The notes under the pieces are model-generated. The model saw only the letters and a list, made by a program, of their open reading frames with translations, made no database searches and was not told the origin of the DNA. Below, in pieces: positions 8,189-63,719 of a DNA stretch of 64,000 nt. How positions within the stretch are numbered: position 1 is the stretch's first letter; every line of letters starts with the position of its first letter. A program made the position numbers and the translations under genes. Source of the stretch: Macrostomum lignano (taxonomy: Eukaryota); NCBI GenBank assembly GCA_002269645.1, contig NIVC01003807.1:1-64000 (forward strand), given 5' to 3'.

Positions 8189-8252
8189 ATATGTGGTTAA
8201 TGTATGTTGTGCATAACGTCTATATTTCAGCGTACAGTGAGTAGCTGGTCGC

Positions 8253-19900: not shown

Positions 19901-22900
19901 GTAGCTCAGGAGTTTAGCTTCCACCTCAGTAGCTCAGGAGTTTAGCTTCCACCTCAGTAGCTCAGGAGTTTAGCTTCCACCTCAGTAGCTCAGGAGTTTA
20001 GCTTCCACCTCAGTAGCTCAGGAGTTTAGCTTCCACCTCAGTAGCTCAGGAGTTTAGCTTCCACCTCAGTAGCTCAGGAGTTTAGCTTCCACCTCAGTAG
20101 CTCAGGAGTTTAGCTTCCACCTCAGTAGCTCAGGAGTTTAGCTTCCACCTCAGTAGCTCAGGAGTTTAGCTTCCACCTCAGTAGCTCAGGAGTTTAGCTT
20201 CCACCTCAGTAGCTCAGGAGTTTAGCTTCCACCTCAGTAGCTCAGGAGTTTAGCTTCCACCTCAGTAGCTCAGGAGTTTAGCTTCCACCTCAGTAGCTCA
20301 GGAGTTTAGCTTCCACCTCAGTAGCTCAGGAGTTTAGCTTCCACCTCAGTAGCTCAGGAGTTTAGCTTCCACCTCAGTAGCTCAGGAGTTTAGCTTCCAC
20401 CTCAGTAGCTCAGGAGTTTAGCTTCCACCTCAGTAGCTCAGGAGTTTAGCTTCCACCTCAGTAGCTCAGGAGTTTAGCTTCCACCTCAGTAGCTCAGGAG
20501 TTTAGCTTCCACCTCAGTAGCTCAGGAGTTTAGCTTCCACCTCAGTAGCTCAGGAGTTTAGCTTCCACCTCAGTAGCTCAGGAGTTTAGCTTCCACCTCA
20601 GTAGCTCAGGAGTTTAGCTTCCACCTCAGTAGCTCAGGAGTTTAGCTTCCACCTCAGTAGCTCAGGAGTTTAGCTTCCACCTCAGTAGCTCAGGAGTTTA
20701 GCTTCCACCTCAGTAGCTCAGGAGTTTAGCTTCCACCTCAGTAGCTCAGGAGTTTAGCTTCCACCTCAGTAGCTCAGGAGTTTAGCTTCCACCTCAGTAG
20801 CTCAGGAGTTTAGCTTCCACCTCAGTAGCTCAGGAGTTTAGCTTCCACCTCAGTAGCTCAGGAGTTTAGCTTCCACCTCAGTAGCTCAGGAGTTTAGCTT
20901 CCACCTCAGTAGCTCAGGAGTTTAGCTTCCACCTCAGTAGCTCAGGAGTTTAGCTTCCACCTCAGTAGCTCAGGAGTTTAGCTTCCACCTCAGTAGCTCA
21001 GGAGTTTAGCTTCCACCTCAGTAGCTCAGGAGTTTAGCTTCCACCTCAGTAGCTCAGGAGTTTAGCTTCCACCTCAGTAGCTCAGGAGTTTAGCTTCCAC
21101 CTCAGTAGCTCAGGAGTTTAGCTTCCACCTCAGTAGCTCAGGAGTTTAGCTTCCACCTCAGTAGCTCAGGAGTTTAGCTTCCACCTCAGTAGCTCAGGAG
21201 TTTAGCTTCCACCTCAGTAGCTCAGGAGTTTAGCTTCCACCTCAGTAGCTCAGGAGTTTAGCTTCCACCTCAGTAGCTCAGGAGTTTAGCTTCCACCTCA
21301 GTAGCTCAGGAGTTTAGCTTCCACCTCAGTAGCTCAGGAGTTTAGCTTCCACCTCAGTAGCTCAGGAGTTTAGCTTCCACCTCAGTAGCTCAGGAGTTTA
21401 GCTTCCACCTCAGTAGCTCAGGAGTTTAGCTTCCACCTCAGTAGCTCAGGAGTTTAGCTTCCACCTCAGTAGCTCAGGAGTTTAGCTTCCACCTCAGTAG
21501 CTCAGGAGTTTAGCTTCCACCTCAGTAGCTCAGGAGTTTAGCTTCCACCTCAGTAGCTCAGGAGTTTAGCTTCCACCTCAGTAGCTCAGGAGTTTAGCTT
21601 CCACCTCAGTAGCTCAGGAGTTTAGCTTCCACCTCAGTAGCTCAGGAGTTTAGCTTCCACCTCAGTAGCTCAGGAGTTTAGCTTCCACCTCAGTAGCTCA
21701 GGAGTTTAGCTTCCACCTCAGTAGCTCAGGAGTTTAGCTTCCACCTCAGTAGCTCAGGAGTTTAGCTTCCACCTCAGTAGCTCAGGAGTTTAGCTTCCAC
21801 CTCAGTAGCTCAGGAGTTTAGCTTCCACCTCAGTAGCTCAGGAGTTTAGCTTCCACCTCAGTAGCTCAGGAGTTTAGCTTCCACCTCAGTAGCTCAGGAG
21901 TTTAGCTTCCACCTCAGTAGCTCAGGAGTTTAGCTTCCACCTCAGTAGCTCAGGAGTTTAGCTTCCACCTCAGTAGCTCAGGAGTTTAGCTTCCACCTCA
22001 GTAGCTCAGGAGTTTAGCTTCCACCTCAGTAGCTCAGGAGTTTAGCTTCCACCTCAGTAGCTCAGGAGTTTAGCTTCCACCTCAGTAGCTCAGGAGTTTA
22101 GCTTCCACCTCAGTAGCTCAGGAGTTTAGCTTCCACCTCAGTAGCTCAGGAGTTTAGCTTCCACCTCAGTAGCTCAGGAGTTTAGCTTCCACCTCAGTAG
22201 CTCAGGAGTTTAGCTTCCACCTCAGTAGCTCAGGAGTTTAGCTTCCACCTCAGTAGCTCAGGAGTTTAGCTTCCACCTCAGTAGCTCAGGAGTTTAGCTT
22301 CCACCTCAGTAGCTCAGGAGTTTAGCTTCCACCTCAGTAGCTCAGGAGTTTAGCTTCCACCTCAGTAGCTCAGGAGTTTAGCTTCCACCTCAGTAGCTCA
22401 GGAGTTTAGCTTCCACCTCAGTAGCTCAGGAGTTTAGCTTCCACCTCAGTAGCTCAGGAGTTTAGCTTCCACCTCAGTAGCTCAGGAGTTTAGCTTCCAC
22501 CTCAGTAGCTCAGGAGTTTAGCTTCCACCTCAGTAGCTCAGGAGTTTAGCTTCCACCTCAGTAGCTCAGGAGTTTAGCTTCCACCTCAGTAGCTCAGGAG
22601 TTTAGCTTCCACCTCAGTAGCTCAGGAGTTTAGCTTCCACCTCAGTAGCTCAGGAGTTTAGCTTCCACCTCAGTAGCTCAGGAGTTTAGCTTCCACCTCA
22701 GTAGCTCAGGAGTTTAGCTTCCACCTCAGTAGCTCAGGAGTTTAGCTTCCACCTCAGTAGCTCAGGAGTTTAGCTTCCACCTCAGTAGCTCAGGAGTTTA
22801 GCTTCCACCTCAGTAGCTCAGGAGTTTAGCTTCCACCTCAGTAGCTCAGGAGTTTAGCTTCCACCTCAGTAGCTCAGGAGTTTAGCTTCCACCTCAGTAG

Positions 22901-25900
22901 CTCAGGAGTTTAGCTTCCACCTCAGTAGCTCAGGAGTTTAGCTTCCACCTCAGTAGCTCAGGAGTTTAGCTTCCACCTCAGTAGCTCAGGAGTTTAGCTT
23001 CCACCTCAGTAGCTCAGGAGTTTAGCTTCCACCTCAGTAGCTCAGGAGTTTAGCTTCCACCTCAGTAGCTCAGGAGTTTAGCTTCCACCTCAGTAGCTCA
23101 GGAGTTTAGCTTCCACCTCAGTAGCTCAGGAGTTTAGCTTCCACCTCAGTAGCTCAGGAGTTTAGCTTCCACCTCAGTAGCTCAGGAGTTTAGCTTCCAC
23201 CTCAGTAGCTCAGGAGTTTAGCTTCCACCTCAGTAGCTCAGGAGTTTAGCTTCCACCTCAGTAGCTCAGGAGTTTAGCTTCCACCTCAGTAGCTCAGGAG
23301 TTTAGCTTCCACCTCAGTAGCTCAGGAGTTTAGCTTCCACCTCAGTAGCTCAGGAGTTTAGCTTCCACCTCAGTAGCTCAGGAGTTTAGCTTCCACCTCA
23401 GTAGCTCAGGAGTTTAGCTTCCACCTCAGTAGCTCAGGAGTTTAGCTTCCACCTCAGTAGCTCAGGAGTTTAGCTTCCACCTCAGTAGCTCAGGAGTTTA
23501 GCTTCCACCTCAGTAGCTCAGGAGTTTAGCTTCCACCTCAGTAGCTCAGGAGTTTAGCTTCCACCTCAGTAGCTCAGGAGTTTAGCTTCCACCTCAGTAG
23601 CTCAGGAGTTTAGCTTCCACCTCAGTAGCTCAGGAGTTTAGCTTCCACCTCAGTAGCTCAGGAGTTTAGCTTCCACCTCAGTAGCTCAGGAGTTTAGCTT
23701 CCACCTCAGTAGCTCAGGAGTTTAGCTTCCACCTCAGTAGCTCAGGAGTTTAGCTTCCACCTCAGTAGCTCAGGAGTTTAGCTTCCACCTCAGTAGCTCA
23801 GGAGTTTAGCTTCCACCTCAGTAGCTCAGGAGTTTAGCTTCCACCTCAGTAGCTCAGGAGTTTAGCTTCCACCTCAGTAGCTCAGGAGTTTAGCTTCCAC
23901 CTCAGTAGCTCAGGAGTTTAGCTTCCACCTCAGTAGCTCAGGAGTTTAGCTTCCACCTCAGTAGCTCAGGAGTTTAGCTTCCACCTCAGTAGCTCAGGAG
24001 TTTAGCTTCCACCTCAGTAGCTCAGGAGTTTAGCTTCCACCTCAGTAGCTCAGGAGTTTAGCTTCCACCTCAGTAGCTCAGGAGTTTAGCTTCCACCTCA
24101 GTAGCTCAGGAGTTTAGCTTCCACCTCAGTAGCTCAGGAGTTTAGCTTCCACCTCAGTAGCTCAGGAGTTTAGCTTCCACCTCAGTAGCTCAGGAGTTTA
24201 GCTTCCACCTCAGTAGCTCAGGAGTTTAGCTTCCACCTCAGTAGCTCAGGAGTTTAGCTTCCACCTCAGTAGCTCAGGAGTTTAGCTTCCACCTCAGTAG
24301 CTCAGGAGTTTAGCTTCCACCTCAGTAGCTCAGGAGTTTAGCTTCCACCTCAGTAGCTCAGGAGTTTAGCTTCCACCTCAGTAGCTCAGGAGTTTAGCTT
24401 CCACCTCAGTAGCTCAGGAGTTTAGCTTCCACCTCAGTAGCTCAGGAGTTTAGCTTCCACCTCAGTAGCTCAGGAGTTTAGCTTCCACCTCAGTAGCTCA
24501 GGAGTTTAGCTTCCACCTCAGTAGCTCAGGAGTTTAGCTTCCACCTCAGTAGCTCAGGAGTTTAGCTTCCACCTCAGTAGCTCAGGAGTTTAGCTTCCAC
24601 CTCAGTAGCTCAGGAGTTTAGCTTCCACCTCAGTAGCTCAGGAGTTTAGCTTCCACCTCAGTAGCTCAGGAGTTTAGCTTCCACCTCAGTAGCTCAGGAG
24701 TTTAGCTTCCACCTCAGTAGCTCAGGAGTTTAGCTTCCACCTCAGTAGCTCAGGAGTTTAGCTTCCACCTCAGTAGCTCAGGAGTTTAGCTTCCACCTCA
24801 GTAGCTCAGGAGTTTAGCTTCCACCTCAGTAGCTCAGGAGTTTAGCTTCCACCTCAGTAGCTCAGGAGTTTAGCTTCCACCTCAGTAGCTCAGGAGTTTA
24901 GCTTCCACCTCAGTAGCTCAGGAGTTTAGCTTCCACCTCAGTAGCTCAGGAGTTTAGCTTCCACCTCAGTAGCTCAGGAGTTTAGCTTCCACCTCAGTAG
25001 CTCAGGAGTTTAGCTTCCACCTCAGTAGCTCAGGAGTTTAGCTTCCACCTCAGTAGCTCAGGAGTTTAGCTTCCACCTCAGTAGCTCAGGAGTTTAGCTT
25101 CCACCTCAGTAGCTCAGGAGTTTAGCTTCCACCTCAGTAGCTCAGGAGTTTAGCTTCCACCTCAGTAGCTCAGGAGTTTAGCTTCCACCTCAGTAGCTCA
25201 GGAGTTTAGCTTCCACCTCAGTAGCTCAGGAGTTTAGCTTCCACCTCAGTAGCTCAGGAGTTTAGCTTCCACCTCAGTAGCTCAGGAGTTTAGCTTCCAC
25301 CTCAGTAGCTCAGGAGTTTAGCTTCCACCTCAGTAGCTCAGGAGTTTAGCTTCCACCTCAGTAGCTCAGGAGTTTAGCTTCCACCTCAGTAGCTCAGGAG
25401 TTTAGCTTCCACCTCAGTAGCTCAGGAGTTTAGCTTCCACCTCAGTAGCTCAGGAGTTTAGCTTCCACCTCAGTAGCTCAGGAGTTTAGCTTCCACCTCA
25501 GTAGCTCAGGAGTTTAGCTTCCACCTCAGTAGCTCAGGAGTTTAGCTTCCACCTCAGTAGCTCAGGAGTTTAGCTTCCACCTCAGTAGCTCAGGAGTTTA
25601 GCTTCCACCTCAGTAGCTCAGGAGTTTAGCTTCCACCTCAGTAGCTCAGGAGTTTAGCTTCCACCTCAGTAGCTCAGGAGTTTAGCTTCCACCTCAGTAG
25701 CTCAGGAGTTTAGCTTCCACCTCAGTAGCTCAGGAGTTTAGCTTCCACCTCAGTAGCTCAGGAGTTTAGCTTCCACCTCAGTAGCTCAGGAGTTTAGCTT
25801 CCACCTCAGTAGCTCAGGAGTTTAGCTTCCACCTCAGTAGCTCAGGAGTTTAGCTTCCACCTCAGTAGCTCAGGAGTTTAGCTTCCACCTCAGTAGCTCA

Positions 25901-28900
25901 GGAGTTTAGCTTCCACCTCAGTAGCTCAGGAGTTTAGCTTCCACCTCAGTAGCTCAGGAGTTTAGCTTCCACCTCAGTAGCTCAGGAGTTTAGCTTCCAC
26001 CTCAGTAGCTCAGGAGTTTAGCTTCCACCTCAGTAGCTCAGGAGTTTAGCTTCCACCTCAGTAGCTCAGGAGTTTAGCTTCCACCTCAGTAGCTCAGGAG
26101 TTTAGCTTCCACCTCAGTAGCTCAGGAGTTTAGCTTCCACCTCAGTAGCTCAGGAGTTTAGCTTCCACCTCAGTAGCTCAGGAGTTTAGCTTCCACCTCA
26201 GTAGCTCAGGAGTTTAGCTTCCACCTCAGTAGCTCAGGAGTTTAGCTTCCACCTCAGTAGCTCAGGAGTTTAGCTTCCACCTCAGTAGCTCAGGAGTTTA
26301 GCTTCCACCTCAGTAGCTCAGGAGTTTAGCTTCCACCTCAGTAGCTCAGGAGTTTAGCTTCCACCTCAGTAGCTCAGGAGTTTAGCTTCCACCTCAGTAG
26401 CTCAGGAGTTTAGCTTCCACCTCAGTAGCTCAGGAGTTTAGCTTCCACCTCAGTAGCTCAGGAGTTTAGCTTCCACCTCAGTAGCTCAGGAGTTTAGCTT
26501 CCACCTCAGTAGCTCAGGAGTTTAGCTTCCACCTCAGTAGCTCAGGAGTTTAGCTTCCACCTCAGTAGCTCAGGAGTTTAGCTTCCACCTCAGTAGCTCA
26601 GGAGTTTAGCTTCCACCTCAGTAGCTCAGGAGTTTAGCTTCCACCTCAGTAGCTCAGGAGTTTAGCTTCCACCTCAGTAGCTCAGGAGTTTAGCTTCCAC
26701 CTCAGTAGCTCAGGAGTTTAGCTTCCACCTCAGTAGCTCAGGAGTTTAGCTTCCACCTCAGTAGCTCAGGAGTTTAGCTTCCACCTCAGTAGCTCAGGAG
26801 TTTAGCTTCCACCTCAGTAGCTCAGGAGTTTAGCTTCCACCTCAGTAGCTCAGGAGTTTAGCTTCCACCTCAGTAGCTCAGGAGTTTAGCTTCCACCTCA
26901 GTAGCTCAGGAGTTTAGCTTCCACCTCAGTAGCTCAGGAGTTTAGCTTCCACCTCAGTAGCTCAGGAGTTTAGCTTCCACCTCAGTAGCTCAGGAGTTTA
27001 GCTTCCACCTCAGTAGCTCAGGAGTTTAGCTTCCACCTCAGTAGCTCAGGAGTTTAGCTTCCACCTCAGTAGCTCAGGAGTTTAGCTTCCACCTCAGTAG
27101 CTCAGGAGTTTAGCTTCCACCTCAGTAGCTCAGGAGTTTAGCTTCCACCTCAGTAGCTCAGGAGTTTAGCTTCCACCTCAGTAGCTCAGGAGTTTAGCTT
27201 CCACCTCAGTAGCTCAGGAGTTTAGCTTCCACCTCAGTAGCTCAGGAGTTTAGCTTCCACCTCAGTAGCTCAGGAGTTTAGCTTCCACCTCAGTAGCTCA
27301 GGAGTTTAGCTTCCACCTCAGTAGCTCAGGAGTTTAGCTTCCACCTCAGTAGCTCAGGAGTTTAGCTTCCACCTCAGTAGCTCAGGAGTTTAGCTTCCAC
27401 CTCAGTAGCTCAGGAGTTTAGCTTCCACCTCAGTAGCTCAGGAGTTTAGCTTCCACCTCAGTAGCTCAGGAGTTTAGCTTCCACCTCAGTAGCTCAGGAG
27501 TTTAGCTTCCACCTCAGTAGCTCAGGAGTTTAGCTTCCACCTCAGTAGCTCAGGAGTTTAGCTTCCACCTCAGTAGCTCAGGAGTTTAGCTTCCACCTCA
27601 GTAGCTCAGGAGTTTAGCTTCCACCTCAGTAGCTCAGGAGTTTAGCTTCCACCTCAGTAGCTCAGGAGTTTAGCTTCCACCTCAGTAGCTCAGGAGTTTA
27701 GCTTCCACCTCAGTAGCTCAGGAGTTTAGCTTCCACCTCAGTAGCTCAGGAGTTTAGCTTCCACCTCAGTAGCTCAGGAGTTTAGCTTCCACCTCAGTAG
27801 CTCAGGAGTTTAGCTTCCACCTCAGTAGCTCAGGAGTTTAGCTTCCACCTCAGTAGCTCAGGAGTTTAGCTTCCACCTCAGTAGCTCAGGAGTTTAGCTT
27901 CCACCTCAGTAGCTCAGGAGTTTAGCTTCCACCTCAGTAGCTCAGGAGTTTAGCTTCCACCTCAGTAGCTCAGGAGTTTAGCTTCCACCTCAGTAGCTCA
28001 GGAGTTTAGCTTCCACCTCAGTAGCTCAGGAGTTTAGCTTCCACCTCAGTAGCTCAGGAGTTTAGCTTCCACCTCAGTAGCTCAGGAGTTTAGCTTCCAC
28101 CTCAGTAGCTCAGGAGTTTAGCTTCCACCTCAGTAGCTCAGGAGTTTAGCTTCCACCTCAGTAGCTCAGGAGTTTAGCTTCCACCTCAGTAGCTCAGGAG
28201 TTTAGCTTCCACCTCAGTAGCTCAGGAGTTTAGCTTCCACCTCAGTAGCTCAGGAGTTTAGCTTCCACCTCAGTAGCTCAGGAGTTTAGCTTCCACCTCA
28301 GTAGCTCAGGAGTTTAGCTTCCACCTCAGTAGCTCAGGAGTTTAGCTTCCACCTCAGTAGCTCAGGAGTTTAGCTTCCACCTCAGTAGCTCAGGAGTTTA
28401 GCTTCCACCTCAGTAGCTCAGGAGTTTAGCTTCCACCTCAGTAGCTCAGGAGTTTAGCTTCCACCTCAGTAGCTCAGGAGTTTAGCTTCCACCTCAGTAG
28501 CTCAGGAGTTTAGCTTCCACCTCAGTAGCTCAGGAGTTTAGCTTCCACCTCAGTAGCTCAGGAGTTTAGCTTCCACCTCAGTAGCTCAGGAGTTTAGCTT
28601 CCACCTCAGTAGCTCAGGAGTTTAGCTTCCACCTCAGTAGCTCAGGAGTTTAGCTTCCACCTCAGTAGCTCAGGAGTTTAGCTTCCACCTCAGTAGCTCA
28701 GGAGTTTAGCTTCCACCTCAGTAGCTCAGGAGTTTAGCTTCCACCTCAGTAGCTCAGGAGTTTAGCTTCCACCTCAGTAGCTCAGGAGTTTAGCTTCCAC
28801 CTCAGTAGCTCAGGAGTTTAGCTTCCACCTCAGTAGCTCAGGAGTTTAGCTTCCACCTCAGTAGCTCAGGAGTTTAGCTTCCACCTCAGTAGCTCAGGAG

Positions 28901-31900
28901 TTTAGCTTCCACCTCAGTAGCTCAGGAGTTTAGCTTCCACCTCAGTAGCTCAGGAGTTTAGCTTCCACCTCAGTAGCTCAGGAGTTTAGCTTCCACCTCA
29001 GTAGCTCAGGAGTTTAGCTTCCACCTCAGTAGCTCAGGAGTTTAGCTTCCACCTCAGTAGCTCAGGAGTTTAGCTTCCACCTCAGTAGCTCAGGAGTTTA
29101 GCTTCCACCTCAGTAGCTCAGGAGTTTAGCTTCCACCTCAGTAGCTCAGGAGTTTAGCTTCCACCTCAGTAGCTCAGGAGTTTAGCTTCCACCTCAGTAG
29201 CTCAGGAGTTTAGCTTCCACCTCAGTAGCTCAGGAGTTTAGCTTCCACCTCAGTAGCTCAGGAGTTTAGCTTCCACCTCAGTAGCTCAGGAGTTTAGCTT
29301 CCACCTCAGTAGCTCAGGAGTTTAGCTTCCACCTCAGTAGCTCAGGAGTTTAGCTTCCACCTCAGTAGCTCAGGAGTTTAGCTTCCACCTCAGTAGCTCA
29401 GGAGTTTAGCTTCCACCTCAGTAGCTCAGGAGTTTAGCTTCCACCTCAGTAGCTCAGGAGTTTAGCTTCCACCTCAGTAGCTCAGGAGTTTAGCTTCCAC
29501 CTCAGTAGCTCAGGAGTTTAGCTTCCACCTCAGTAGCTCAGGAGTTTAGCTTCCACCTCAGTAGCTCAGGAGTTTAGCTTCCACCTCAGTAGCTCAGGAG
29601 TTTAGCTTCCACCTCAGTAGCTCAGGAGTTTAGCTTCCACCTCAGTAGCTCAGGAGTTTAGCTTCCACCTCAGTAGCTCAGGAGTTTAGCTTCCACCTCA
29701 GTAGCTCAGGAGTTTAGCTTCCACCTCAGTAGCTCAGGAGTTTAGCTTCCACCTCAGTAGCTCAGGAGTTTAGCTTCCACCTCAGTAGCTCAGGAGTTTA
29801 GCTTCCACCTCAGTAGCTCAGGAGTTTAGCTTCCACCTCAGTAGCTCAGGAGTTTAGCTTCCACCTCAGTAGCTCAGGAGTTTAGCTTCCACCTCAGTAG
29901 CTCAGGAGTTTAGCTTCCACCTCAGTAGCTCAGGAGTTTAGCTTCCACCTCAGTAGCTCAGGAGTTTAGCTTCCACCTCAGTAGCTCAGGAGTTTAGCTT
30001 CCACCTCAGTAGCTCAGGAGTTTAGCTTCCACCTCAGTAGCTCAGGAGTTTAGCTTCCACCTCAGTAGCTCAGGAGTTTAGCTTCCACCTCAGTAGCTCA
30101 GGAGTTTAGCTTCCACCTCAGTAGCTCAGGAGTTTAGCTTCCACCTCAGTAGCTCAGGAGTTTAGCTTCCACCTCAGTAGCTCAGGAGTTTAGCTTCCAC
30201 CTCAGTAGCTCAGGAGTTTAGCTTCCACCTCAGTAGCTCAGGAGTTTAGCTTCCACCTCAGTAGCTCAGGAGTTTAGCTTCCACCTCAGTAGCTCAGGAG
30301 TTTAGCTTCCACCTCAGTAGCTCAGGAGTTTAGCTTCCACCTCAGTAGCTCAGGAGTTTAGCTTCCACCTCAGTAGCTCAGGAGTTTAGCTTCCACCTCA
30401 GTAGCTCAGGAGTTTAGCTTCCACCTCAGTAGCTCAGGAGTTTAGCTTCCACCTCAGTAGCTCAGGAGTTTAGCTTCCACCTCAGTAGCTCAGGAGTTTA
30501 GCTTCCACCTCAGTAGCTCAGGAGTTTAGCTTCCACCTCAGTAGCTCAGGAGTTTAGCTTCCACCTCAGTAGCTCAGGAGTTTAGCTTCCACCTCAGTAG
30601 CTCAGGAGTTTAGCTTCCACCTCAGTAGCTCAGGAGTTTAGCTTCCACCTCAGTAGCTCAGGAGTTTAGCTTCCACCTCAGTAGCTCAGGAGTTTAGCTT
30701 CCACCTCAGTAGCTCAGGAGTTTAGCTTCCACCTCAGTAGCTCAGGAGTTTAGCTTCCACCTCAGTAGCTCAGGAGTTTAGCTTCCACCTCAGTAGCTCA
30801 GGAGTTTAGCTTCCACCTCAGTAGCTCAGGAGTTTAGCTTCCACCTCAGTAGCTCAGGAGTTTAGCTTCCACCTCAGTAGCTCAGGAGTTTAGCTTCCAC
30901 CTCAGTAGCTCAGGAGTTTAGCTTCCACCTCAGTAGCTCAGGAGTTTAGCTTCCACCTCAGTAGCTCAGGAGTTTAGCTTCCACCTCAGTAGCTCAGGAG
31001 TTTAGCTTCCACCTCAGTAGCTCAGGAGTTTAGCTTCCACCTCAGTAGCTCAGGAGTTTAGCTTCCACCTCAGTAGCTCAGGAGTTTAGCTTCCACCTCA
31101 GTAGCTCAGGAGTTTAGCTTCCACCTCAGTAGCTCAGGAGTTTAGCTTCCACCTCAGTAGCTCAGGAGTTTAGCTTCCACCTCAGTAGCTCAGGAGTTTA
31201 GCTTCCACCTCAGTAGCTCAGGAGTTTAGCTTCCACCTCAGTAGCTCAGGAGTTTAGCTTCCACCTCAGTAGCTCAGGAGTTTAGCTTCCACCTCAGTAG
31301 CTCAGGAGTTTAGCTTCCACCTCAGTAGCTCAGGAGTTTAGCTTCCACCTCAGTAGCTCAGGAGTTTAGCTTCCACCTCAGTAGCTCAGGAGTTTAGCTT
31401 CCACCTCAGTAGCTCAGGAGTTTAGCTTCCACCTCAGTAGCTCAGGAGTTTAGCTTCCACCTCAGTAGCTCAGGAGTTTAGCTTCCACCTCAGTAGCTCA
31501 GGAGTTTAGCTTCCACCTCAGTAGCTCAGGAGTTTAGCTTCCACCTCAGTAGCTCAGGAGTTTAGCTTCCACCTCAGTAGCTCAGGAGTTTAGCTTCCAC
31601 CTCAGTAGCTCAGGAGTTTAGCTTCCACCTCAGTAGCTCAGGAGTTTAGCTTCCACCTCAGTAGCTCAGGAGTTTAGCTTCCACCTCAGTAGCTCAGGAG
31701 TTTAGCTTCCACCTCAGTAGCTCAGGAGTTTAGCTTCCACCTCAGTAGCTCAGGAGTTTAGCTTCCACCTCAGTAGCTCAGGAGTTTAGCTTCCACCTCA
31801 GTAGCTCAGGAGTTTAGCTTCCACCTCAGTAGCTCAGGAGTTTAGCTTCCACCTCAGTAGCTCAGGAGTTTAGCTTCCACCTCAGTAGCTCAGGAGTTTA

Positions 31901-33199
31901 GCTTCCACCTCAGTAGCTCAGGAGTTTAGCTTCCACCTCAGTAGCTCAGGAGTTTAGCTTCCACCTCAGTAGCTCAGGAGTTTAGCTTCCACCTCAGTAG
32001 CTCAGGAGTTTAGCTTCCACCTCAGTAGCTCAGGAGTTTAGCTTCCACCTCAGTAGCTCAGGAGTTTAGCTTCCACCTCAGTAGCTCAGGAGTTTAGCTT
32101 CCACCTCAGTAGCTCAGGAGTTTAGCTTCCACCTCAGTAGCTCAGGAGTTTAGCTTCCACCTCAGTAGCTCAGGAGTTTAGCTTCCACCTCAGTAGCTCA
32201 GGAGTTTAGCTTCCACCTCAGTAGCTCAGGAGTTTAGCTTCCACCTCAGTAGCTCAGGAGTTTAGCTTCCACCTCAGTAGCTCAGGAGTTTAGCTTCCAC
32301 CTCAGTAGCTCAGGAGTTTAGCTTCCACCTCAGTAGCTCAGGAGTTTAGCTTCCACCTCAGTAGCTCAGGAGTTTAGCTTCCACCTCAGTAGCTCAGGAG
32401 TTTAGCTTCCACCTCAGTAGCTCAGGAGTTTAGCTTCCACCTCAGTAGCTCAGGAGTTTAGCTTCCACCTCAGTAGCTCAGGAGTTTAGCTTCCACCTCA
32501 GTAGCTCAGGAGTTTAGCTTCCACCTCAGTAGCTCAGGAGTTTAGCTTCCACCTCAGTAGCTCAGGAGTTTAGCTTCCACCTCAGTAGCTCAGGAGTTTA
32601 GCTTCCACCTCAGTAGCTCAGGAGTTTAGCTTCCACCTCAGTAGCTCAGGAGTTTAGCTTCCACCTCAGTAGCTCAGGAGTTTAGCTTCCACCTCAGTAG
32701 CTCAGGAGTTTAGCTTCCACCTCAGTAGCTCAGGAGTTTAGCTTCCACCTCAGTAGCTCAGGAGTTTAGCTTCCACCTCAGTAGCTCAGGAGTTTAGCTT
32801 CCACCTCAGTAGCTCAGGAGTTTAGCTTCCACCTCAGTAGCTCAGGAGTTTAGCTTCCACCTCAGTAGCTCAGGAGTTTAGCTTCCACCTCAATAGCTCA
32901 GGAGTTTAGCTTCCACCTCAATAGCTCAGGAGTTTAGCTTCCACCTCAATAGCTCAGGAGTTTAGCTTCCACCTCAATAGCTCAGGAGTTTAGCTTCCAC
33001 CTCAGTAGCTCAGGAGTTTAGCTTCCACCTCAGTAGCTCAGGAGTTTAGCTTCCACCTCAATAGCTCAGGAGTTTAGCTTCCACCTCAGTAGCTCAGGAG
33101 TTTAGCTTCCACCTCAGTAGCTCAGGAGTTTAGCTTCCACCTCAGGAGTTTAGCTTCCACCTCAGTAGCTCAGGAGTTTAGCTTCCACCTCAGTTGCTC
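16918..33199. repeat. 16.3-kb satellite of a 28-bp unit (AGTTTAGCTTCCACCTCAGTAGCTCAGG), ~580 copies
   Basis: Line pattern recurs every 420 bp (15 units) without visible change. Variants appear only at the edges: ccgcc/ccatc at ~16950-17015, ctcaatag at ~32890-33065, one shortened unit at ~33140. Confidence 0.98.
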
Positions 33200-45928: not shown

Positions 45929-46534
45929 TTAAGTCAGTCAAATGTGGGCATATAGAAATAGTTGTCAATTTAGAGTACTGTGTAAACAAACCGGCATCCA
46001 ATGAATTCTGCACTATTGTCAAGCTGTCCAATGAAGGCAATCTAGACACTGAGTCTTTATTTTAACCTGAAAATCGCACGATTATTGAGAAAAGTAAAAC
46101 AATGAATAGCATATATTGATGAGAATTGCTCTGCTAATCCAGCCACTTCCCGGAATCTACAGTGGAGCTGATAGTGAGGGTGATACACTCGTATCTTGCT
46201 GCGCCCGAACGGACTCGCTGTCAGCTCTTTGTCAACCTATTATTTAGTAGGTGATTTTCTCTTACAGATAAATTGCAAACTAATAAGTGTAAAGCCCGGT
46301 TAACACTACTGTTAGTAGCTCTGCAGGTCAGATAGGATTGAAATTCAAGTTTTTTCATTGTTTTTTCTTTATTTTCAAGTCAATAAACATCTCCGTCAGT
46401 CTTAAAAATGTTGTTCGTCGCCATTCGGGCTCAGCAAAGTACAATTTAATACCATAGCAAATATACGAGCGGATAAACACGCTAGGCAGATTAATATTAA
46501 AACTGTAAAAACAGATATCAGCAGTTGCTAATGA

Positions 46535-49500
46535 TCACTCGATGGAAGGCAGCGGCCCCACCCCGGCAGCCAGCCGGTGCACCGCCTCCGCCACCTGCAG
46601 CGCCAGCTGGTCCGCCAGCTCCCTGGTTGCGCCCTCAGCGTACACCCGGACAACATCCTCCGTGCCGGACGGGCGGACAAAAGCCCGGCCACGCTGGGTG
46701 GCCGCCACCAGGTCATCTATGACCGGCTGCAGTCCCTCCGGCAGCACGCAGCGCCGCTCGGCATCCGTGGTGGTCACCGCCGACCTGTTGGCGACCGACA
46801 CCTTCAGCTGGCGGCTGGGCAGGTCCGTGTAGCAGGCGTTCCACTCGGCCGCGCCCCAGCCCGCCTCGGCCAGCGCGTGCTCCACTGCGAGCAGCACAGA
46901 GACTGCGTCACCCACCTGCGGCAGTGAGAGCGGGAGATGCTTGAGCCTGACCTCTGCTGACACTAAATATGCCTGTCCCTGACACCTCTGCTGACACTAA
47001 ATATGCCTGTCTCTGACACCTCTGCTGACACTAAATATGCCTGTCCCTGACATCTCTGCTGACACTAAATATGCCTGTGTCTGACATCTCTGCTGACACT
47101 AAATATGCCTGTGTCTGACATCTCTGCTGACACTAAATATGCCTGTGTCTGACATCTCTGCTGACCATAAATATGCCTGTGTCTGACACCTCTGCTGACC
47201 ATAAATATGCCTGTGTCTGACATCTCTGCTGACCATAAATATGCCTGTGTCTGACACCTCTGCTGACCATAAATATGCCTGTGTCTGACATCCCACACTG
47301 AAATTGCTGAGTCCTGACCCCCTATCACAGAAAGCTTTCAACCCCAGACCCCGAGCACAAGCGCGCCGCAGCCCACCGTCTCATTGATCAGATCCATCAC
47401 CAGGCGCAGTTCTCGAGCCGCTTCAACTTTCTCGCCAGCCTCGCCCTCACTGTCGGCAGCGACGGCCAAAATAGCCGATCGAGCCCGGTCGCTGAACAGC
47501 ACAGTGCCGTGACCGTTGGCCTCAAAATAAACGCCGATGTCGAAGTCTTTGGCCCGCTTGTGCAGATGCTTGACGCCGGTTGGCACGCAAGCCACCGCCA
47601 CGCCCAGCTGTTCGGCGAGGTAGCGGGTGGACTCGGCGTTGGCGTAGGCGGTCTGCACCAGGCCGGTGTTCAGATTCAGCCCGGCCGCTCGGATCCGCCC
47701 GATCAGGTAGGCGGCGAGCAGGGCCGCCTGCTTGTCGCCGTCCAACATCTGCGCGATGGCGATGGCGATTATTCGGTTAGTTGGTGTTTATTAATTTTTG
47801 TTTACTGGTTAATTTTAGTTCATTTGGTGAATTCTTTTTGTCGATTTTTTGCTTACTTGCTAATTTTAGCTTACTTGTTGATTTTTAGTGTATTTGTTGA
47901 TCTTAGTTGATTTGTTGATTTTAGCTTACTGTTGATTTTTAGTGTATTTGTTGATTTTAGTTGATTTGTTGATTTTAGCTTTCTTGTTGATTGTGTTTAT
48001 TTGTTGATTTTAGCTTACTTGTTGATTTTTAGTGTATTTGTTGATTTTAGTTGATTTGTTGATTTTAGCTTTTTTGTTGATTTTAGTTGATTTGTTGATT
48101 TTAGCTTTCTTGTTGATTTTAGCTGATTTGTTGATTTTAGCTGATTTGTTGATTTTAGCTGATTTGTTGATATTAGCTGATTTGTTGATTTTTAGTTTAT
48201 TTGTTGATTTTTAGTTGATTAGTTGATTTTTAGTTGATTTGTTGATTTTTAGTTTATTTGTTGATTTTAGTTGATTTGTTGATTTTAGTTGATTTGTTGA
48301 TTTTAGCTTTCTTGTTGATTTTAGCTGATTTGTTGATTTTAGCTGATTTGTTGATTTTAGCTTACTTGTTGATTTTTAGTTTATTTGTTGATTTTAGTTG
48401 ATTAGTTGATTTTTAGTTGATTTGTTGATTTTTAGTTTATTTGTTGATTTTAGTTGATTTGTTGATTTTAGTTGATTTGTTGATTTTAGCTTTCTTGTTG
48501 ATTTTAGCTGATTTGTTGATTTTAGCTGATTTGTTGATTTTAGCTGATTTGTTGATTTTAGCTGATTTGTTGATTTTTAGTTTATTTGTTGATCTTTGTT
48601 GATTTGTTGATTTTAGTTGATTTGTTGATTTTAGCTGGCTAATTTTTTGTTTTTCGTTGATCTTTGTTTATGTGTAAGGTTCTTTGTTCATTTGTTGATT
48701 TTTGTTTATGTGTAAGTTTTTGTTTACTTGTAGAGTTTTTTGTGTAGGGTTTTTTGTTTATTTGTAATTTTTTATTTATAGCTTTTTGTTTACTCGTATT
48801 TGTAGGCATATTTTTGTAGTTTTTTAGTTAAGTTGAGTTTTTCTGTAGCTGTTTGTTGATGTGAAGCCGTTTTATTATTTCAATTTTTGTCTATTTTCAG
48901 TCTTCTTGTTGATTTGCAGCTTTTTCATTTGCATTTTTTCTAATCTTGCCTTGTATTTTAAAGCAGAAGCCCCTCATTCTCACCTGGAACTGGCCCTCGG
49001 AGTCGCAGTAGAAATAGATTATCCTATCAGCATCGCCATCGAACGAAGCCCAGCGCTGCCCCGGCTCGAACTGCAGGCCCCGGCCCTCCGGGAAGCGCAT
49101 CTGCACTTTGACGAAGTCCGCACCGCACCTGCGGGTGGGGGCACACATGAAATACTGACAGTCACTCATGAAATACTGACAGTCACACATGAAATACTGA
49201 CAGGCACACATGAAATACTGACAGGCACACATGAAATACTGACAGTCACACATGAAATACTGACAGGCACACATAAAAGACAAAGAAACAGTCACATTAA
49301 AGGACAGAGAACCAAACGTAAAAGACAGGCAAACCCAGATATTAAAAAAGACAGACAAATAAAGACGGACAAACAGACATTAAGGGCAGACGAACAGACA
49401 TTAAGCGCAGGTAAAAAATACAAGGTGAGCCCGGTGCAGTCACCTATAATTAAGCTCGCCATCGCCGCTATTATGCACAACCAGGCGCAGGTGCTCGCCA

Positions 49501-50991
49501 AGAAGCGGCGCCAACTGCGCCAGCGCCCCGGCGCCAACTCCGTTAGCGGCGTCGATGTGAACGCTGCGAGGACCGGCGCCGCCGCCGCCCTTTAGCGACC
49601 TTCTCTCGGCCAGTCGGACAAAAGCGCCGGCCAGTTTCTCGGCGTAACCGGACAGGCTCGGCCGGCCGTAAGCCGGGTTGTTGGTGCAGGCCACAATGTA
49701 GTGCAGCTGCGGAGTTGTGAGCACGCCCAGCTGCTCAGCCACAGCCAGCTGTTCGTCATCGGCTTCATCAGTGCCGGCCGGATTGCAGGCGCGAACTCCG
49801 GCGGCCACAGCCTCGGCCAGGCTGGGCGAGGATTTGCGCGAATCGTGTCCGACCAGAACTCGGCCGCGCCTGGACGGACGGAAGAGATGAGGGTGAAACT
49901 GGTTAACTGTCCTACTGGCCTAGTGGTCAGAGCGTCGGACTCACCACCGAAAGGTCGGGGGTTCGATTCCCGACCCATTCGGAGCAATTTGTGTCCTTGA
50001 GCAAGACACTTAACTCTGCATTGCTTCAGTTCACCCAGCTGTAAAATGGGTGCCAGCATTAGCTGGGGTAATTGAGGCTGTGTGGAGACCCCCCAGTCCT
50101 TGGACTGAACAGCCGTACGCAGCCTTCAGATGCGCCGCGCAATAGCTGCGGCTGAGCTGTCGGTTGCACATTTGGCCCAATTGGGGCCAACCCCAAGCTT
50201 ACTCAGGCATATATACTTAGTAAAACTGCTCACTACTTCCAGTACAGTAGCAAGGAAGAATTCAAGGCGCAATTGCAAAGTACATTAGCCAGCGCCACTG
50301 TGAATGTACATGACAGCTTTAGGCTGAAACCACCGAGAAAAGCAAAAAAAAATGGGCGGCCGGGGCGGCGGGGTTGAGGTTTTGTTCGGAAAGGCGCAAT
50401 GGGGGAGGGTTTAAGCTTAAGAGCCAATAAAGAGCCAATTGTGTTTAAAAATATTTGAAATTGCTTCTGTTTAACTTACTACTGAACTGAATAGTAGCTT
50501 ACACGCAAATGTGCTGAGTGAGGAAAAGCCTACCTAGCAACAAACTGAGCCGTGGTTATGAATTCGCTATCGTGCAGAGTGCTCAACAGCACGTGAAGAT
50601 GATTCCTCAGCTCGGTGTCTAACGCGTTCACCAGTCCGCTGGCGATCGGCTCCCATTCAACCGGCAGCATGTCGCCATTGGGCTCGACCAGTTTGACGCC
50701 GTTGTCATGCTCGGGATTGTGGCTGGCCGTCACCATCACGCCGACTGCTTGCCCGTGCAGAGATCGCGACCTCAGAGCGGCCAGCACTCCCATGCGAAAC
50801 ATGATGTAGTCCATTTGGCCCGCGTCCGCTCGCATCCGGAAGCCGGCGGTGCCGTAGGCCACGTGACCATGCAGCTGCGGATGCCTGTAGGCGCCGGAGC
50901 AGGCCGTCTGGCACACGGAGTTCACCAGGGCGTCAACCGAGGCTGGTGGCGGCAGCACCGCCGAGTTTCTGTTGTGCGACTGTTGAGTCAA
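46535..50991 (-). CDS. PGM3: Phosphoacetylglucosamine mutase; complement(join(46535..46915,47377..47748,48984..49128,49444..49869,50534..50991)), 593 codons, no initiator ATG found
   Basis: Motifs YGTAGFR, GVMVTASHNPEHDNGVKL (catalytic Ser), LTTPQLHY, DAANGVGA, CGADFVK, SFDGDADR, DGDK, GVKHLH, GVYFEANGHGTV, RAFVRPSGTEDVVRVYAE. Four GT-AG introns in compatible phases (2, 2, 0, 0); total 1782 nt. Confidence 0.95.
46950..47290. repeat. 34-bp minisatellite (ctgacacctctgctgacactaaatatgcctgtgt) in PGM3 intron 4
   Basis: About 10 units. Confidence 0.93.
47850..48640. repeat. Degenerate T-rich ~18-bp repeat (ttgttgattttagctgat) in PGM3 intron 3
   Basis: Dense recurrence of ttgttgatttt(t)ag units. 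Confidence 0.88.
49142..49272. repeat. 21-bp minisatellite (cacatgaaatactgacagtca) in PGM3 intron 2
   Basis: About 6 units. Confidence 0.9.
49909..50175 (+). mobile_element. tRNA-derived SINE with a CORE/Deu-like central domain, antisense in PGM3 intron 1
   Basis: Pol III A box tggcctagtgg (49916-49926) and B box ggttcgattcc (49960-49970), followed by tgtgtccttgagcaagacacttaactc...cacccagctgtaaaatgggt, which resembles conserved SINE central domains. It lacks a proper tRNA acceptor stem. Confidence 0.8.
50200..50520. mobile_element. Unclassified TIR element, copy 3 (PGM3 intron 1)
   Basis: Same internal sequence as copies 1 and 2. The right TIR is truncated at ctgagtg, 13 bp from the intron 1 donor. 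Confidence 0.75.
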
Positions 50992-51000
50992 CTGGAAATA
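50992..51000 (-). promoter_or_regulatory. 3' splice (probably trans-splice) acceptor TATTTCCAG| immediately before the PGM3 reading frame
   Basis: The acceptor is in phase 0 with the PGM3 frame. There is an in-frame stop at 51036-51034 and no in-frame ATG between it and the acceptor. Confidence 0.7.
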
Positions 51001-51050
51001 TTGCGGGTTTTGAATGCGACTGCCGTCTCTGTCTCAACTCTCATAGGATC

Positions 51051-51863
<813 letters not shown>

Positions 51864-52384
51864 TAGGCAGCCAAATTGAATGAAAACCGTGAAGCACGAA
51901 GTGTTAAGATATAGAAAAGTGTTTATAAACCGGTCTATATATTGCAACAGCTGGTTAAAAATGCTTTAATAAGCTTGAGAATTCAAACAGGCAGAACAGA
52001 ACGCAGTACACTATTAGCGTAGAAAACACAGTACACAATAGAAAAATAACATTAATATAATGCAAATGCTTGCATGGTGAAATATAAATTCAGAGTATTA
52101 AAGTTAATTAATAAACTTGATTAGTTGTTAACCAGTAAAACTTAGGAGTTGAGTCATGAGTCAAGACAGCACCCTTATTGCATTAGTTGGCATTAAAGAC
52201 AGCGATATATATCATAAATAATATAGTAAAAAATAGAAAATGCATATCGCCAATCAGCCGGGCCAAGTGTAAAAAAGAACATTGAGCTTCCTAATGGCAG
52301 TAAGTGAATTATAAAAATGCTTAATCATTTTTTGCGTAATAATCGTTAATCCAATTGTATTAACTTCGAACAGATTATTCCAGG

Positions 52385-63719
<11,335 letters not shown>

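What the first reader, a model, noticed from the sequence alone, without database searches (positions are those of the whole stretch)
50833..51036. PGM3 has no initiator ATG: start codon probably donated by a spliced leader
Seen: the reading frame begins exactly at a strong acceptor (tatttccag|TTG ACT CAA, phase 0). An in-frame TGA sits 15 codons upstream (51036). The first in-frame ATG (50835, codon 53) lies after the conserved YGTAGFR motif, so starting there would truncate the enzyme. Known: flatworm spliced leaders end in AUG, and in Schistosoma this AUG can serve as the initiator Met. Inference: SL-AUG|UUG ACU CAA gives MLTQQSHNR..., making an essential UDP-GlcNAc pathway enzyme obligately dependent on trans-splicing for translation.
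Basis: partly seen in the sequence, partly recalled or inferred. Interest (0 to 1): 0.8.

Follow-up and report, generated by a model that had tools for sequence, protein, structure and literature searches.

The report
Flatworm PGM3 start codon from spliced leader
This Macrostomum lignano gene for an essential sugar-nucleotide enzyme has no start codon of its own and almost certainly gets it from the AUG at the end of the trans-spliced leader, a trick already known in flatworms.

Summary
The window is Macrostomum lignano (assembly Mlig_3_7, contig NIVC01003807.1). PGM3/AGM1 lies on the minus strand as five GT-AG exons (50991-46535, 593 codons). Its frame opens at the acceptor caatatttccag|TTG. 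An in-frame TGA lies 15 codons upstream. The first genomic in-frame ATG is codon 53, after the YGTAGFR motif.

- The M. lignano spliced leader (SL) ends in ...TTATTGCATG.
- My spliced model is identical to GenBank PAA49712.1/PAA61556.1. That protein is flagged 'partial' and starts at this same TTG. The annotation cut transcripts at SL-read peaks.
- In two of the four assembled copies of the locus, the bases before TTGACT have been replaced by the last 9 or 11 nt of the SL. Mlig_3_7 was polished with RNA-seq, so this is a footprint of SL|TTGACT reads.
- The SL AUG is the first AUG of the mature mRNA, is in frame, and gives MLTQQSHNR...

Initiation at that AUG is inferred, not shown.

The mechanism has been known in flatworms since Cheng et al. 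2006. This is a new member of a known kind and of modest interest. Two practical by-products: a 'partial' GenBank protein that is probably complete, and an RNA-polishing artefact at trans-splice sites in Mlig_3_7.

The parts
50992..50997 (-). 3' splice (trans-splice) acceptor TTCCAG, preceded by caatat
   Evidence: Read directly. It fits the M. lignano trans-splice acceptor motif [T/C]TNCAG (PMC8629364). In two sister copies it is overwritten by the SL 3' end. It is kept in the window copy and in L006.
50534..50991 (-). PGM3/AGM1 exon 1 (codons 1-153, phase 0 at its 5' end, donor AG|gtaggc)
   Evidence: The GenBank CDS of PAA49712.1/PAA61556.1 starts at its first base.
49444..49869 (-). PGM3 exon 2
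   Evidence: The spliced product is identical to PAA49712.1.
48984..49128 (-). PGM3 exon 3
47377..47748 (-). PGM3 exon 4
46535..46915 (-). PGM3 exon 5, with the TGA stop at 46537-46535
46368..46373 (-). AATAAA, the likely PGM3 poly(A) signal
   Evidence: Read directly; its function is inferred.
51034..51036 (-). In-frame TGA in the outron, 15 codons upstream of codon 1
50988..51044 (-). Out-of-frame ATG-initiated 18-codon ORF in the outron. Trans-splicing at 50991 removes its ATG.
50836..50856 (-). Codons 46-52, YGTAGFR, the conserved N-terminal motif of phosphoacetylglucosamine mutases
   Evidence: Present (with Y occasionally replaced) in all orthologues inspected.
50833..50835 (-). First genomic in-frame ATG (codon 53)
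50953..50958 (-). Near-cognate GTG (codon 12) and CTG (codon 13), at the point where composition turns coding-like. A possible site of the lost ancestral ATG and a possible rival start.
   Evidence: for the composition and codon-usage shift. The ancestral-ATG idea is inference.
51053..51863 (-). (CTGT)n microsatellite filling most of the outron / RTEL1-PGM3 spacer
   Evidence: TRF: period 4, 203 copies.
52385..52564 (-). Last coding exon and stop codon of the upstream same-strand gene RTEL1 (Mlig027287)
   Evidence: the C-terminus ...[11 protein letters not shown] of PAA52858.1.
51965..51970 (-). ATTAAA, a candidate RTEL1 poly(A) signal
   Evidence: its function is inferred.

Best explanation
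The PGM3 (phosphoacetylglucosamine mutase) pre-mRNA of Macrostomum lignano is SL trans-spliced at the acceptor ending at 50992. This discards an outron that holds the (CTGT)n array, an out-of-frame ATG and an in-frame TGA. The mature mRNA begins CGGUCUCUUACUGCGAAGACUCAAUUUAUUGC-AUG|UUG ACU CAA CAG.... The SL's terminal AUG is the first AUG on the message and is in frame. It is used as the initiator and gives a 594-residue enzyme starting MLTQQSHNR.

Shown here:
- the organism and its SL sequence;
- the intact gene;
- the absence of a usable genomic ATG;
- a transcript-based annotation that starts at the junction;
- an SL-sequence footprint at the junction in sister copies.

Inferred:
- initiation at the SL AUG;
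- PGM3 is the downstream gene of an RTEL1-PGM3 polycistron;
- codons 1-11 are a former 5'UTR absorbed into the ORF after a native ATG was lost near codon 12/13 (now GTG CTG).
For: (1) Identity. The 593-aa spliced model equals PAA49712.1/PAA61556.1 'BOX15_Mlig008588g1, partial [Macrostomum lignano]'. L002 from NIVC01003807.1 is identical to the window over 10,457 bp.

(2) The SL ends in ATG and has no other ATG. The Macrostomum SL's final ATG is noted as a likely start codon in PMC10468722.

(3) Three GenBank gene copies start their 5'-partial CDS at the first base after the acceptor. The annotation pipeline (TBONE) cut transcripts at peaks of SL-containing reads. An uncut transcript would have extended the open frame 14 more codons to the TGA.

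(4) Four assembled copies were compared. The window/L002 and L006 have ...caatatttccag|TTGACT. L001 has ...caatATTGCATG|TTGACT, and L003/L004 have ...cgcTTTATTGCATG|TTGACT, the last 9 and 11 nt of the SL. Background divergence between copies is 0.1-0.4% in exons and about 0.8% in the flank. L001 differs from the window at only those three bases across the roughly 280 aligned non-repeat columns at the junction.

(5) Mlig_3_7 was polished with Pilon using STAR-mapped RNA-seq. A +1/-1 extension of the SL into the native outron peaks at exactly 9 nt, which is the extent overwritten in L001. An older-assembly model of the L003-type copy translates the native ...NPQYFQ|LTQQ.

(6) In the mature mRNA the next AUGs are out of frame (32-codon ORF) or at codon 53. 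Orthologue N-termini align to about codon 17-18, and Candida AGM1 residue 5 aligns to codon 28. A codon-53 start would therefore delete conserved structure.

(7) No credible upstream ATG exon with a phase-0 donor exists in the 1.4 kb up to the RTEL1 stop.

(8) Precedent: the SL AUG is in frame in 28% of S. mansoni trans-spliced mRNAs and required by more than 40 cDNAs, and its use is conserved in Echinococcus.
Against: - No RNA read, cDNA or peptide was seen directly. The SL footprint is indirect.
- The sequences M+LTQQ... (both allelic forms) are not in the 15-billion-protein collection.
- The SL AUG has a poor Kozak context (U at -3, U at +4), so leaky scanning is likely.
- Codons 1-17 have weak coding signal: codon log-odds 0.20, against 1.19 +/- 0.35 for the rest of the CDS and below the lowest window there. 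They have no counterpart in orthologues. Near-cognate GTG/CTG at codons 12/13 sit exactly where the coding signal begins, so a non-AUG start cannot be excluded.
- The acceptor motif alone is expected by chance with p of about 0.15.
Confidence: 0.8

Rival explanations
1. The mRNA is SL trans-spliced at 50991, but the functional start is a near-cognate codon (GUG codon 12 or CUG codon 13, or UUG codon 1). The SL AUG is skipped, or used only partly, because of its weak context.
For: - The coding-like composition and codon usage begin at about codon 11.
- Orthologue Met positions align to codon 17-18.
- The SL AUG has U at -3 and U at +4.
- Non-AUG starts in SL-bearing mRNAs are reported for nematodes (PMC9851317).
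Against: - The SL AUG is the first AUG, lies 32 nt from the cap and is in frame.
- Sole reliance of a housekeeping enzyme on a non-AUG start is rare.
- GTG and CTG have only G at -3 and C at +4.
Confidence: 0.1
2. A cis-spliced upstream exon carrying the ATG is joined to the 50991 acceptor. It could lie in the AT-rich 51864-52385 stretch, or be an RTEL1 exon giving an RTEL1-PGM3 fusion.
For: - A weak candidate exists: ATG CCA ACT AAT GCA ATA AGG|gtgctg at 52193-52173.
- An 1804-aa RTEL1-PGM3 fusion model exists in UniRef (A0A1I8I4V1).
- Parasitic flatworms share acceptors between cis- and trans-splicing (PMC12582326).
Against: - No candidate has a good donor (best score 2 of 6).
- The fusion model uses a different, very poor intron (GATT|gttgac ... 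gacagag|ACGG, no pyrimidine tract). It looks like an ab initio artefact caused by the missing ATG.
- The SL suffix, not an exon sequence, was written at the junction in two copies.
- The transcript-based annotation ends at the acceptor.
Confidence: 0.04
3. Translation starts at Met53 and gives an N-terminally truncated protein, or the locus is a decaying or mis-assembled copy (for example an indel that hides the frame of the ATG at 51044).
For: - Met53 is the first genomic in-frame ATG.
- One copy (L006) has a 1-bp deletion in exon 1.
- The ATG at 51044 would come into frame with a single inserted base.
Against: - A Met53 start removes YGTAGFR and about 30 residues that align to solved AGM1 structures.
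- The 593-codon frame is intact and identical or nearly so in three copies, with 4 synonymous to 1 conservative change in exon 1.
- All four copies share the same frame relation upstream.
- The composition upstream of 50991 is non-coding.
Confidence: 0.03
4. The SL-derived ATTGCATG/TTTATTGCATG in copies L001 and L003 is real DNA. It would come from cDNA-mediated conversion of the 5' end by a trans-spliced mRNA, so those copies have regained a genomic ATG and no longer need the SL.
For: The sequences are in the deposited assembly. They would create an in-frame genomic ATG TTG ACT.
Against: - RNA-seq polishing is documented.
- The extent in L001 equals the alignment-score optimum.
- Introns and the upstream flank are untouched.
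- An older assembly model of the L003-type copy reads the native sequence.
- The change destroys the AG acceptor without providing a promoter.
Confidence: 0.03

Closest known systems
Flatworm mRNAs that use the SL 3'-terminal AUG as initiator methionine (Cheng, Cohen, Ndegwa & Davis 2006, J Biol Chem 281:733, as summarised in PMC9851317, PMC12582326 and PMC3510090)
   Same: - The SL ends in ...UUGCAUG.
- The acceptor is in phase 0 with the main ORF.
- There is no stop between the SL AUG and conserved sequence.
- There is no native AUG upstream of the conserved N-terminus.
   Different: The documented cases are in Neodermata (Schistosoma, Echinococcus). This one is in a free-living, early-branching macrostomid. 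Use of the AUG is inferred here, not assayed. The N-terminal extension is 17 residues and looks like recruited 5'UTR.
slORFs: ORFs created by start codons in spliced leaders of nematodes, Oikopleura and trypanosomes (slORFfinder, PMC9851317)
   Same: The start codon is supplied in trans by the leader, and genome-only annotation misses it.
   Different: Those leaders mostly supply near-cognate NUG codons, and the ORFs are often alternative or overlapping. Here a canonical AUG starts the main, conserved ORF.
[quoted passage not shown]
   Same: - YTNCAG acceptor.
- A conserved housekeeping gene.
- A same-strand upstream gene, with a repeat-inflated spacer that shrinks to a few hundred nt or less once repeats are subtracted.
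   Different: Those papers do not discuss SL-AUG-dependent ORFs. The gene is deposited as 'partial'. Operon membership was not tested here.
Phosphoacetylglucosamine mutase AGM1/PGM3 (e.g. Candida albicans 2DKA, Aspergillus 4BJU, human PGM3)
   Same: 47-54% identity across the five orthologues inspected that span at least 92% of the query. Catalytic motifs TASHNP, DGDADR, EANGHG and RPSGTED are present, along with four Pfam domains.
   Different: It has a 17-residue non-homologous N-terminal extension and no genomic initiator codon.

Membership tests
SL-AUG-initiated flatworm mRNA (Cheng et al. 2006 class) | The organism has an SL RNA whose exon ends in AUG | tested here: met
   The organism was identified as M. 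lignano. Its SL is CGGTCTCTTACTGCGAAGACTCAATTTATTGCATG (PMC8629364), with a single ATG at nt 33-35.
SL-AUG-initiated flatworm mRNA (Cheng et al. 2006 class) | The SL is joined to this mRNA at a defined acceptor | tested here: met
   The evidence is indirect but specific. The transcript-based partial CDS starts at the first base after the AG in three GenBank copies. An SL suffix of 9 or 11 nt is written over the acceptor in two of the four copies of an RNA-seq-polished assembly. No raw read was seen.
SL-AUG-initiated flatworm mRNA (Cheng et al. 2006 class) | [quoted passage not shown] | tested here: met
   AUG|UUG ACU... gives a 594-codon ORF.
SL-AUG-initiated flatworm mRNA (Cheng et al. 2006 class) | No native in-frame AUG can give an N-terminus matching conserved orthologues | tested here: met
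   The first in-frame ATG is codon 53, after YGTAGFR. Orthologue N-termini align to codons 17-28.
SL-AUG-initiated flatworm mRNA (Cheng et al. 2006 class) | Translation actually initiates at the SL AUG | not testable with these tools
   This needs N-terminal proteomics, initiation-site ribosome profiling or a reporter assay.
Phosphoacetylglucosamine mutase (AGM1/PGM3), alpha-D-phosphohexomutase superfamily | Four-domain architecture and catalytic motifs: phosphoserine loop TASHNP, metal loop DGDADR, sugar loop EANGHG, phosphate loop RPSGTED | tested here: met
   Pfam PF02878, PF21405, PF21404 and PF00408 are on record for the product. The motifs are read directly in the translation. The best PDB match is 2DKA AGM1, E = 9e-26 for exon 1. 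Full-length orthologues reach E = 1e-160.
Downstream gene of an M. lignano operon | A same-strand upstream gene, a repeat-adjusted intergenic distance under 1 kb, and a trans-spliced downstream gene (criteria of PMC8629364) | tested here: inconclusive
   From the RTEL1 stop at 52385 to the acceptor at 50992 is 1,393 nt. Subtracting the 811-nt (CTGT)n array leaves 582 nt, or about 150 nt measured from the ATTAAA at 51970. A polycistronic precursor was not observed.

The most novel reading that the evidence does not exclude
The SL-derived ...(T)TTATTGCATG immediately upstream of TTGACT in two of the four PGM3 copies might be genuine genomic sequence. [quoted passage not shown] That would be a snapshot of how an SL-dependent gene regains (or loses) its own start codon.
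Probability: 0.03. Interest if true: 0.7.

Novelty: new member of a known kind. Interest (0 to 1): 0.33.

Why it matters
SL-donated initiator codons have been accepted flatworm biology since 2006, so the mechanism is not new. Four points give it some value.

1. It is a concrete, well-supported case in Macrostomum, a free-living and early-branching flatworm model. This suggests that dependence on the SL AUG is not confined to parasitic Neodermata.
2. It explains why GenBank and UniProt carry this essential enzyme only as 'partial' or as a spurious RTEL1-PGM3 fusion. Pipelines that trim the SL before ORF calling will systematically lose such start codons.
3. It ties production of a UDP-GlcNAc pathway enzyme to trans-splicing, which is testable in a species with transgenesis.
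4. The by-product may be of more practical use. RNA-seq polishing of Mlig_3_7 wrote SL sequence over a native acceptor. If that happened at other trans-splice sites, it could mislead promoter, CRISPR or splice-site work there.

Tried and rejected
- Rfam scan of the window: no family, and no SL RNA gene. Pattern scans for an SL RNA gene (ATG|GTRAG plus an Sm site) found only one chance hit, antisense to an SNF2 intron.
- Homology searches with exon 1 and with the full protein gave nothing above about 60% identity (54% for the full protein), which suggested an unsampled organism. That was misleading. The M. lignano PGM3 proteins sit in a 90% cluster whose representative is RTEL1, because a fusion model links the two.
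- The third protein search, with the INTS7 exon, returned nothing, although Pfam recognises it.
- Exact look-ups of window ORFs failed: the exon-1 ORF, a 499-aa ORF and the INTS7 exon.
- The exact sequences M+LTQQ..., the Met53 start, the TTG or GTG starts, the SL-extended form and the exon-1 ORFs are not in the collection.
- The representative-library search found only about 50% relatives, plus an error-ridden 76% entry that appears to be M. lignano again, so no other Macrostomum orthologue could be compared.
- Enumeration of upstream ATG...GT phase-0 exons gave no credible candidate.
- The codon-usage test of codons 1-17 was ambiguous, falling between intron and CDS values.
- SL-suffix matches of 7-8 nt elsewhere in the loci, including ATTGCATG|GCTAG upstream of RTEL1 in all three copies, are at chance level and were not interpreted.
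Full report
**1. Observation.**
The gene reads on the minus strand. The sequence is ...gcattcaaaacccgcaatatttccag|TTG ACT CAA CAG TCG..., with the AG at 50993-50992 and the first codon at 50991.

- The frame is open upstream only to the TGA at 51036-51034, 15 codons away, and has no ATG in that stretch.
- The first in-frame ATG is at 50835 (codon 53), immediately after Y-G-T-A-G-F-R (codons 46-52).
- An out-of-frame ATG at 51044 opens an 18-codon ORF that stops at 50990-50988.
- From 50991 the gene can be spliced through four GT-AG introns into a 593-codon ORF ending at 46535.
- It carries the phosphohexomutase motifs TASHNP, DGDADR, EANGHG and RPSGTED.
- It matches AGM1/PGM3 of many animals and fungi. 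The five orthologues inspected that span at least 92% of the query are 47-54% identical.

The acceptor sequence alone is not strong evidence. YTNCAG occurs at 0.28% of positions, so a phase-0 match somewhere in the 59 available codon boundaries has a chance expectation of about 0.17. Three other phase-0 CAG sites lie within the first 40 codons.

**2. Where a start is needed.**
Orthologues begin 20-29 residues before YGTAGFR. For example, MSVEELYSQATSVALKQHPK... of a barnacle lines up with ...A-SVDALVNSVCQTACSGAYRHPQ... here. Their Met corresponds to about codon 17-18, and residue 5 of Candida AGM1 (2DKA) aligns to codon 28. A Met53 start would remove the conserved motif and about 30 structured residues. 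Some start upstream of codon 46 is therefore required, and the genome offers no in-frame ATG.

**3. Search for a cis solution.**
Upstream on the same strand lie three things:

- an 811-bp (CTGT)n array (51053-51863);
- about 520 bp of AT-rich sequence;
- the last exon and stop codon (52385) of RTEL1.

I enumerated every ATG followed in phase 0 by GT in this 1.4 kb. This gave only microsatellite-derived noise and one weak candidate, MPTNAIR AGG|gtgctg at 52193-52173.

Codon-usage scoring shows that codons 18-44 are typical coding sequence (log-odds 1.25). Codons 1-17 are intermediate (0.20, below every window of the remaining CDS but above 95% of intron windows). The 17 codons upstream of the acceptor are non-coding (-0.61). 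The compositional switch lies near codon 11, next to GTG (12) and CTG (13).

**4. Identity of the organism.**
Homology searches gave nothing closer than about 60%, and exact ORF look-ups failed. An exact look-up of the spliced product without a Met succeeded. It equals GenBank PAA49712.1/PAA61556.1, 'hypothetical protein BOX15_Mlig008588g1, partial [Macrostomum lignano]'. A second gene, PAA52859.1 (Mlig033967g1, one L-to-I change), starts with the same LTQQSHNR.

The genomic locus L002 (GCA_002269645.1, NIVC01003807.1) is identical to the window over 10,457 bp.

The earlier searches missed these proteins for a specific reason. A UniRef fusion model (A0A1I8I4V1, 1804 aa, RTEL1 joined to PGM3) links both families into one 90% cluster, and that cluster's representative is RTEL1.

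**5. The leader.**
M. lignano trans-splices about 30-39% of its genes to a single 35-nt SL, CGGTCTCTTACTGCGAAGACTCAATTTATTGCATG. The acceptor motif is [T/C]TNCAG (PMC8629364; PMC5730564). The site here, TTCCAG, fits. The SL has one ATG, at its 3' end. [quoted passage not shown]

**6. Evidence that the SL is joined at 50991.**

(a) The GenBank models come from a pipeline (TBONE) that cuts transcripts at peaks of SL-containing reads and then calls ORFs. The 5'-partial CDS begins at the first base after the AG in all annotated copies. An uncut transcript would have given an ORF extending 14 codons further, to the TGA.

(b) Four assembled copies of the locus could be compared.

| Copy | Sequence before TTGACT |
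|---|---|
| window/L002 | ...cccgcaatatttccag |
| L006 (NIVC01002422.1) | ...cccgcaatatttccag |
| L001 (NIVC01002019.1) | ...cccgcaatATTGCATG |
| L003/L004 (NIVC01003174.1) | ...cccgcTTTATTGCATG |

The last two carry the terminal 9 and 11 nt of the SL.

- Elsewhere the copies differ at 0.1-0.4% of exon positions and about 0.8% of flank positions.
- L001 differs from the window at only these three bases across the roughly 280 aligned non-repeat columns at the junction.
- Chance cannot produce three (L001) or five (L003) clustered substitutions that all convert to the SL sequence.
- The native outron happens to share TATT-C--G with the SL end. A +1/-1 extension of the SL into it peaks at exactly 9 nt, the extent overwritten in L001.
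- The older-assembly fusion model belongs to the L003-type copy (it shares NAID and DCIP) and translates the native ...NPQYFQ|LTQQ.

The simplest reading is that SL-bearing RNA-seq reads ending ...TTATTGCATG|TTGACTCAACAG were aligned across the junction and 'corrected' the genome in two copies. That is a footprint of the predicted trans-spliced mRNA.

**7. Mechanism.**
The mature 5' end is the SL followed by exon 1.

| AUG position (nt) | Frame | ORF |
|---|---|---|
| 33 (SL AUG) | in frame | 594 codons, MLTQQSHNRNSAVLPPPASVDALV... |
| 157 | out of frame | 32 codons |
| 192 | in frame | starts at Met53 |

Trans-splicing also removes the outron's out-of-frame ATG and its in-frame stop.

By the scanning model, and by precedent, the SL AUG is the initiator. 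PMC9851317 reports, citing Cheng et al. 2006, that the SL AUG is in frame in 28% of S. mansoni trans-spliced mRNAs and required by more than 40 cDNAs. PMC3510090 reports that its use is conserved in Echinococcus.

This step is inferred. The AUG's context is poor (U at -3, U at +4), so some leaky scanning or near-cognate initiation at GUG12/CUG13 is possible.

The weak coding signal of codons 1-11, together with GTG/CTG being one substitution from ATG, suggests a history. A native ATG near codon 12-13 may have become dispensable once the in-frame SL AUG was present, and was then lost. This is speculation; the one difference among copies in this stretch is synonymous.

RTEL1's candidate poly(A) signal (ATTAAA at 51970) lies about 150 nt from the acceptor once the microsatellite is subtracted. 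That falls within the repeat-adjusted spacing used to call M. lignano operons. PGM3 may therefore be the downstream gene of a dicistron, which was not tested.

**8. Comparison and novelty.**
This is the class described by Cheng et al. 2006, and it passes every feature that could be tested here. Only actual initiation at the SL AUG could not be tested. It is a new member (PGM3, in a macrostomid) of a known kind.

The ab initio models in UniProt illustrate the annotation cost:

- the RTEL1-PGM3 fusion through an implausible intron;
- a Met-less model with a frame-fixing micro-intron;
- truncated models.

**9. Verdict.**
My confidence is about 0.9 for trans-splicing at 50991 and about 0.8 for the SL AUG being the main start. 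Interest is modest at 0.33, because the mechanism is textbook for flatworms. The assembly-polishing artefact and the mis-annotated 'partial' proteins are the more actionable by-products.

Noticed in passing
L001:2992-3000 and L003:2990-3000 (= L004:14254-14264), against window 50992-51000 and L006:17531-17539: Two of the four assembled copies of the PGM3 locus in Mlig_3_7 have the SL 3' end (TATTGCATG / TTTATTGCATG) written over the native acceptor TATTTCCAG. This is most likely an artefact of Pilon polishing with RNA-seq. It destroys the AG and creates a spurious genomic ATG. The same may have happened at other trans-splice sites in this assembly.
   Followed up: yes
protein cluster of P0241-P0249: An 1804-aa UniRef model (A0A1I8I4V1) fuses RTEL1 to PGM3 through an implausible intron (GATT|gttgac ... 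gacagag|ACGG). It links both families into one 90% cluster whose representative is RTEL1, which hid the M. lignano PGM3 proteins from the homology searches.
   Followed up: yes
window 50992-52387, minus strand: RTEL1 (Mlig027287; exons from beyond 64000 down to the stop at 52385) is followed on the same strand by PGM3. After subtracting the 811-bp (CTGT)n array, the spacer is 582 nt, or about 150 nt measured from the ATTAAA at 51970. This fits published M. lignano operon criteria.
   Followed up: partly
window 16918-33199 and throughout: A 16.3-kb array of a 28-bp unit (TTAGCTTCCACCTCAGTAGCTCAGGAGT, 582 copies, 99% identity) lies immediately upstream of an SNF2 (ARIP4-like) gene. Minisatellites with 12-74-bp units occupy three of the four PGM3 introns and much of the intronic and intergenic sequence elsewhere. 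Array lengths differ between the gene copies (PGM3 spans 4.5, 5.1 and 6.6 kb).
   Followed up: partly
window 8222-8255 (+); L004-L006:1490-1503: INTS7 (ATG at 8253) has a YTNCAG-type acceptor, tatatttcag|, ending at 8230, 22 nt upstream of its ATG. An SL AUG joined there would be out of frame and would open a 15-codon uORF. RTEL1 copies have ...ctatcaag|ATGACC, where an SL AUG would be in frame directly before the native ATG.
   Followed up: no
L006:17540-17924: The fourth PGM3 copy (NIVC01002422.1) lacks one G in exon 1 (GGGCAAGCA-TCGGCGTG against window 50752-50735). This is a frameshift that is either an assembly error or a decaying copy.
   Followed up: no
window 3643-4810, minus strand: Remnant of a hAT-family transposase (weak match to the C-terminal dimerisation domain, E = 9e-4) in the AT-rich region upstream of INTS7.
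   Followed up: no
window 57555-57734 region, against P0243: The GenBank RTEL1 model for this contig (PAA49713.1, 848 aa) ends in ...[16 protein letters not shown].... This looks like read-through into an intron when compared with the 1252-aa model of the sister copy, so the RTEL1 annotation here is probably truncated.
   Followed up: no
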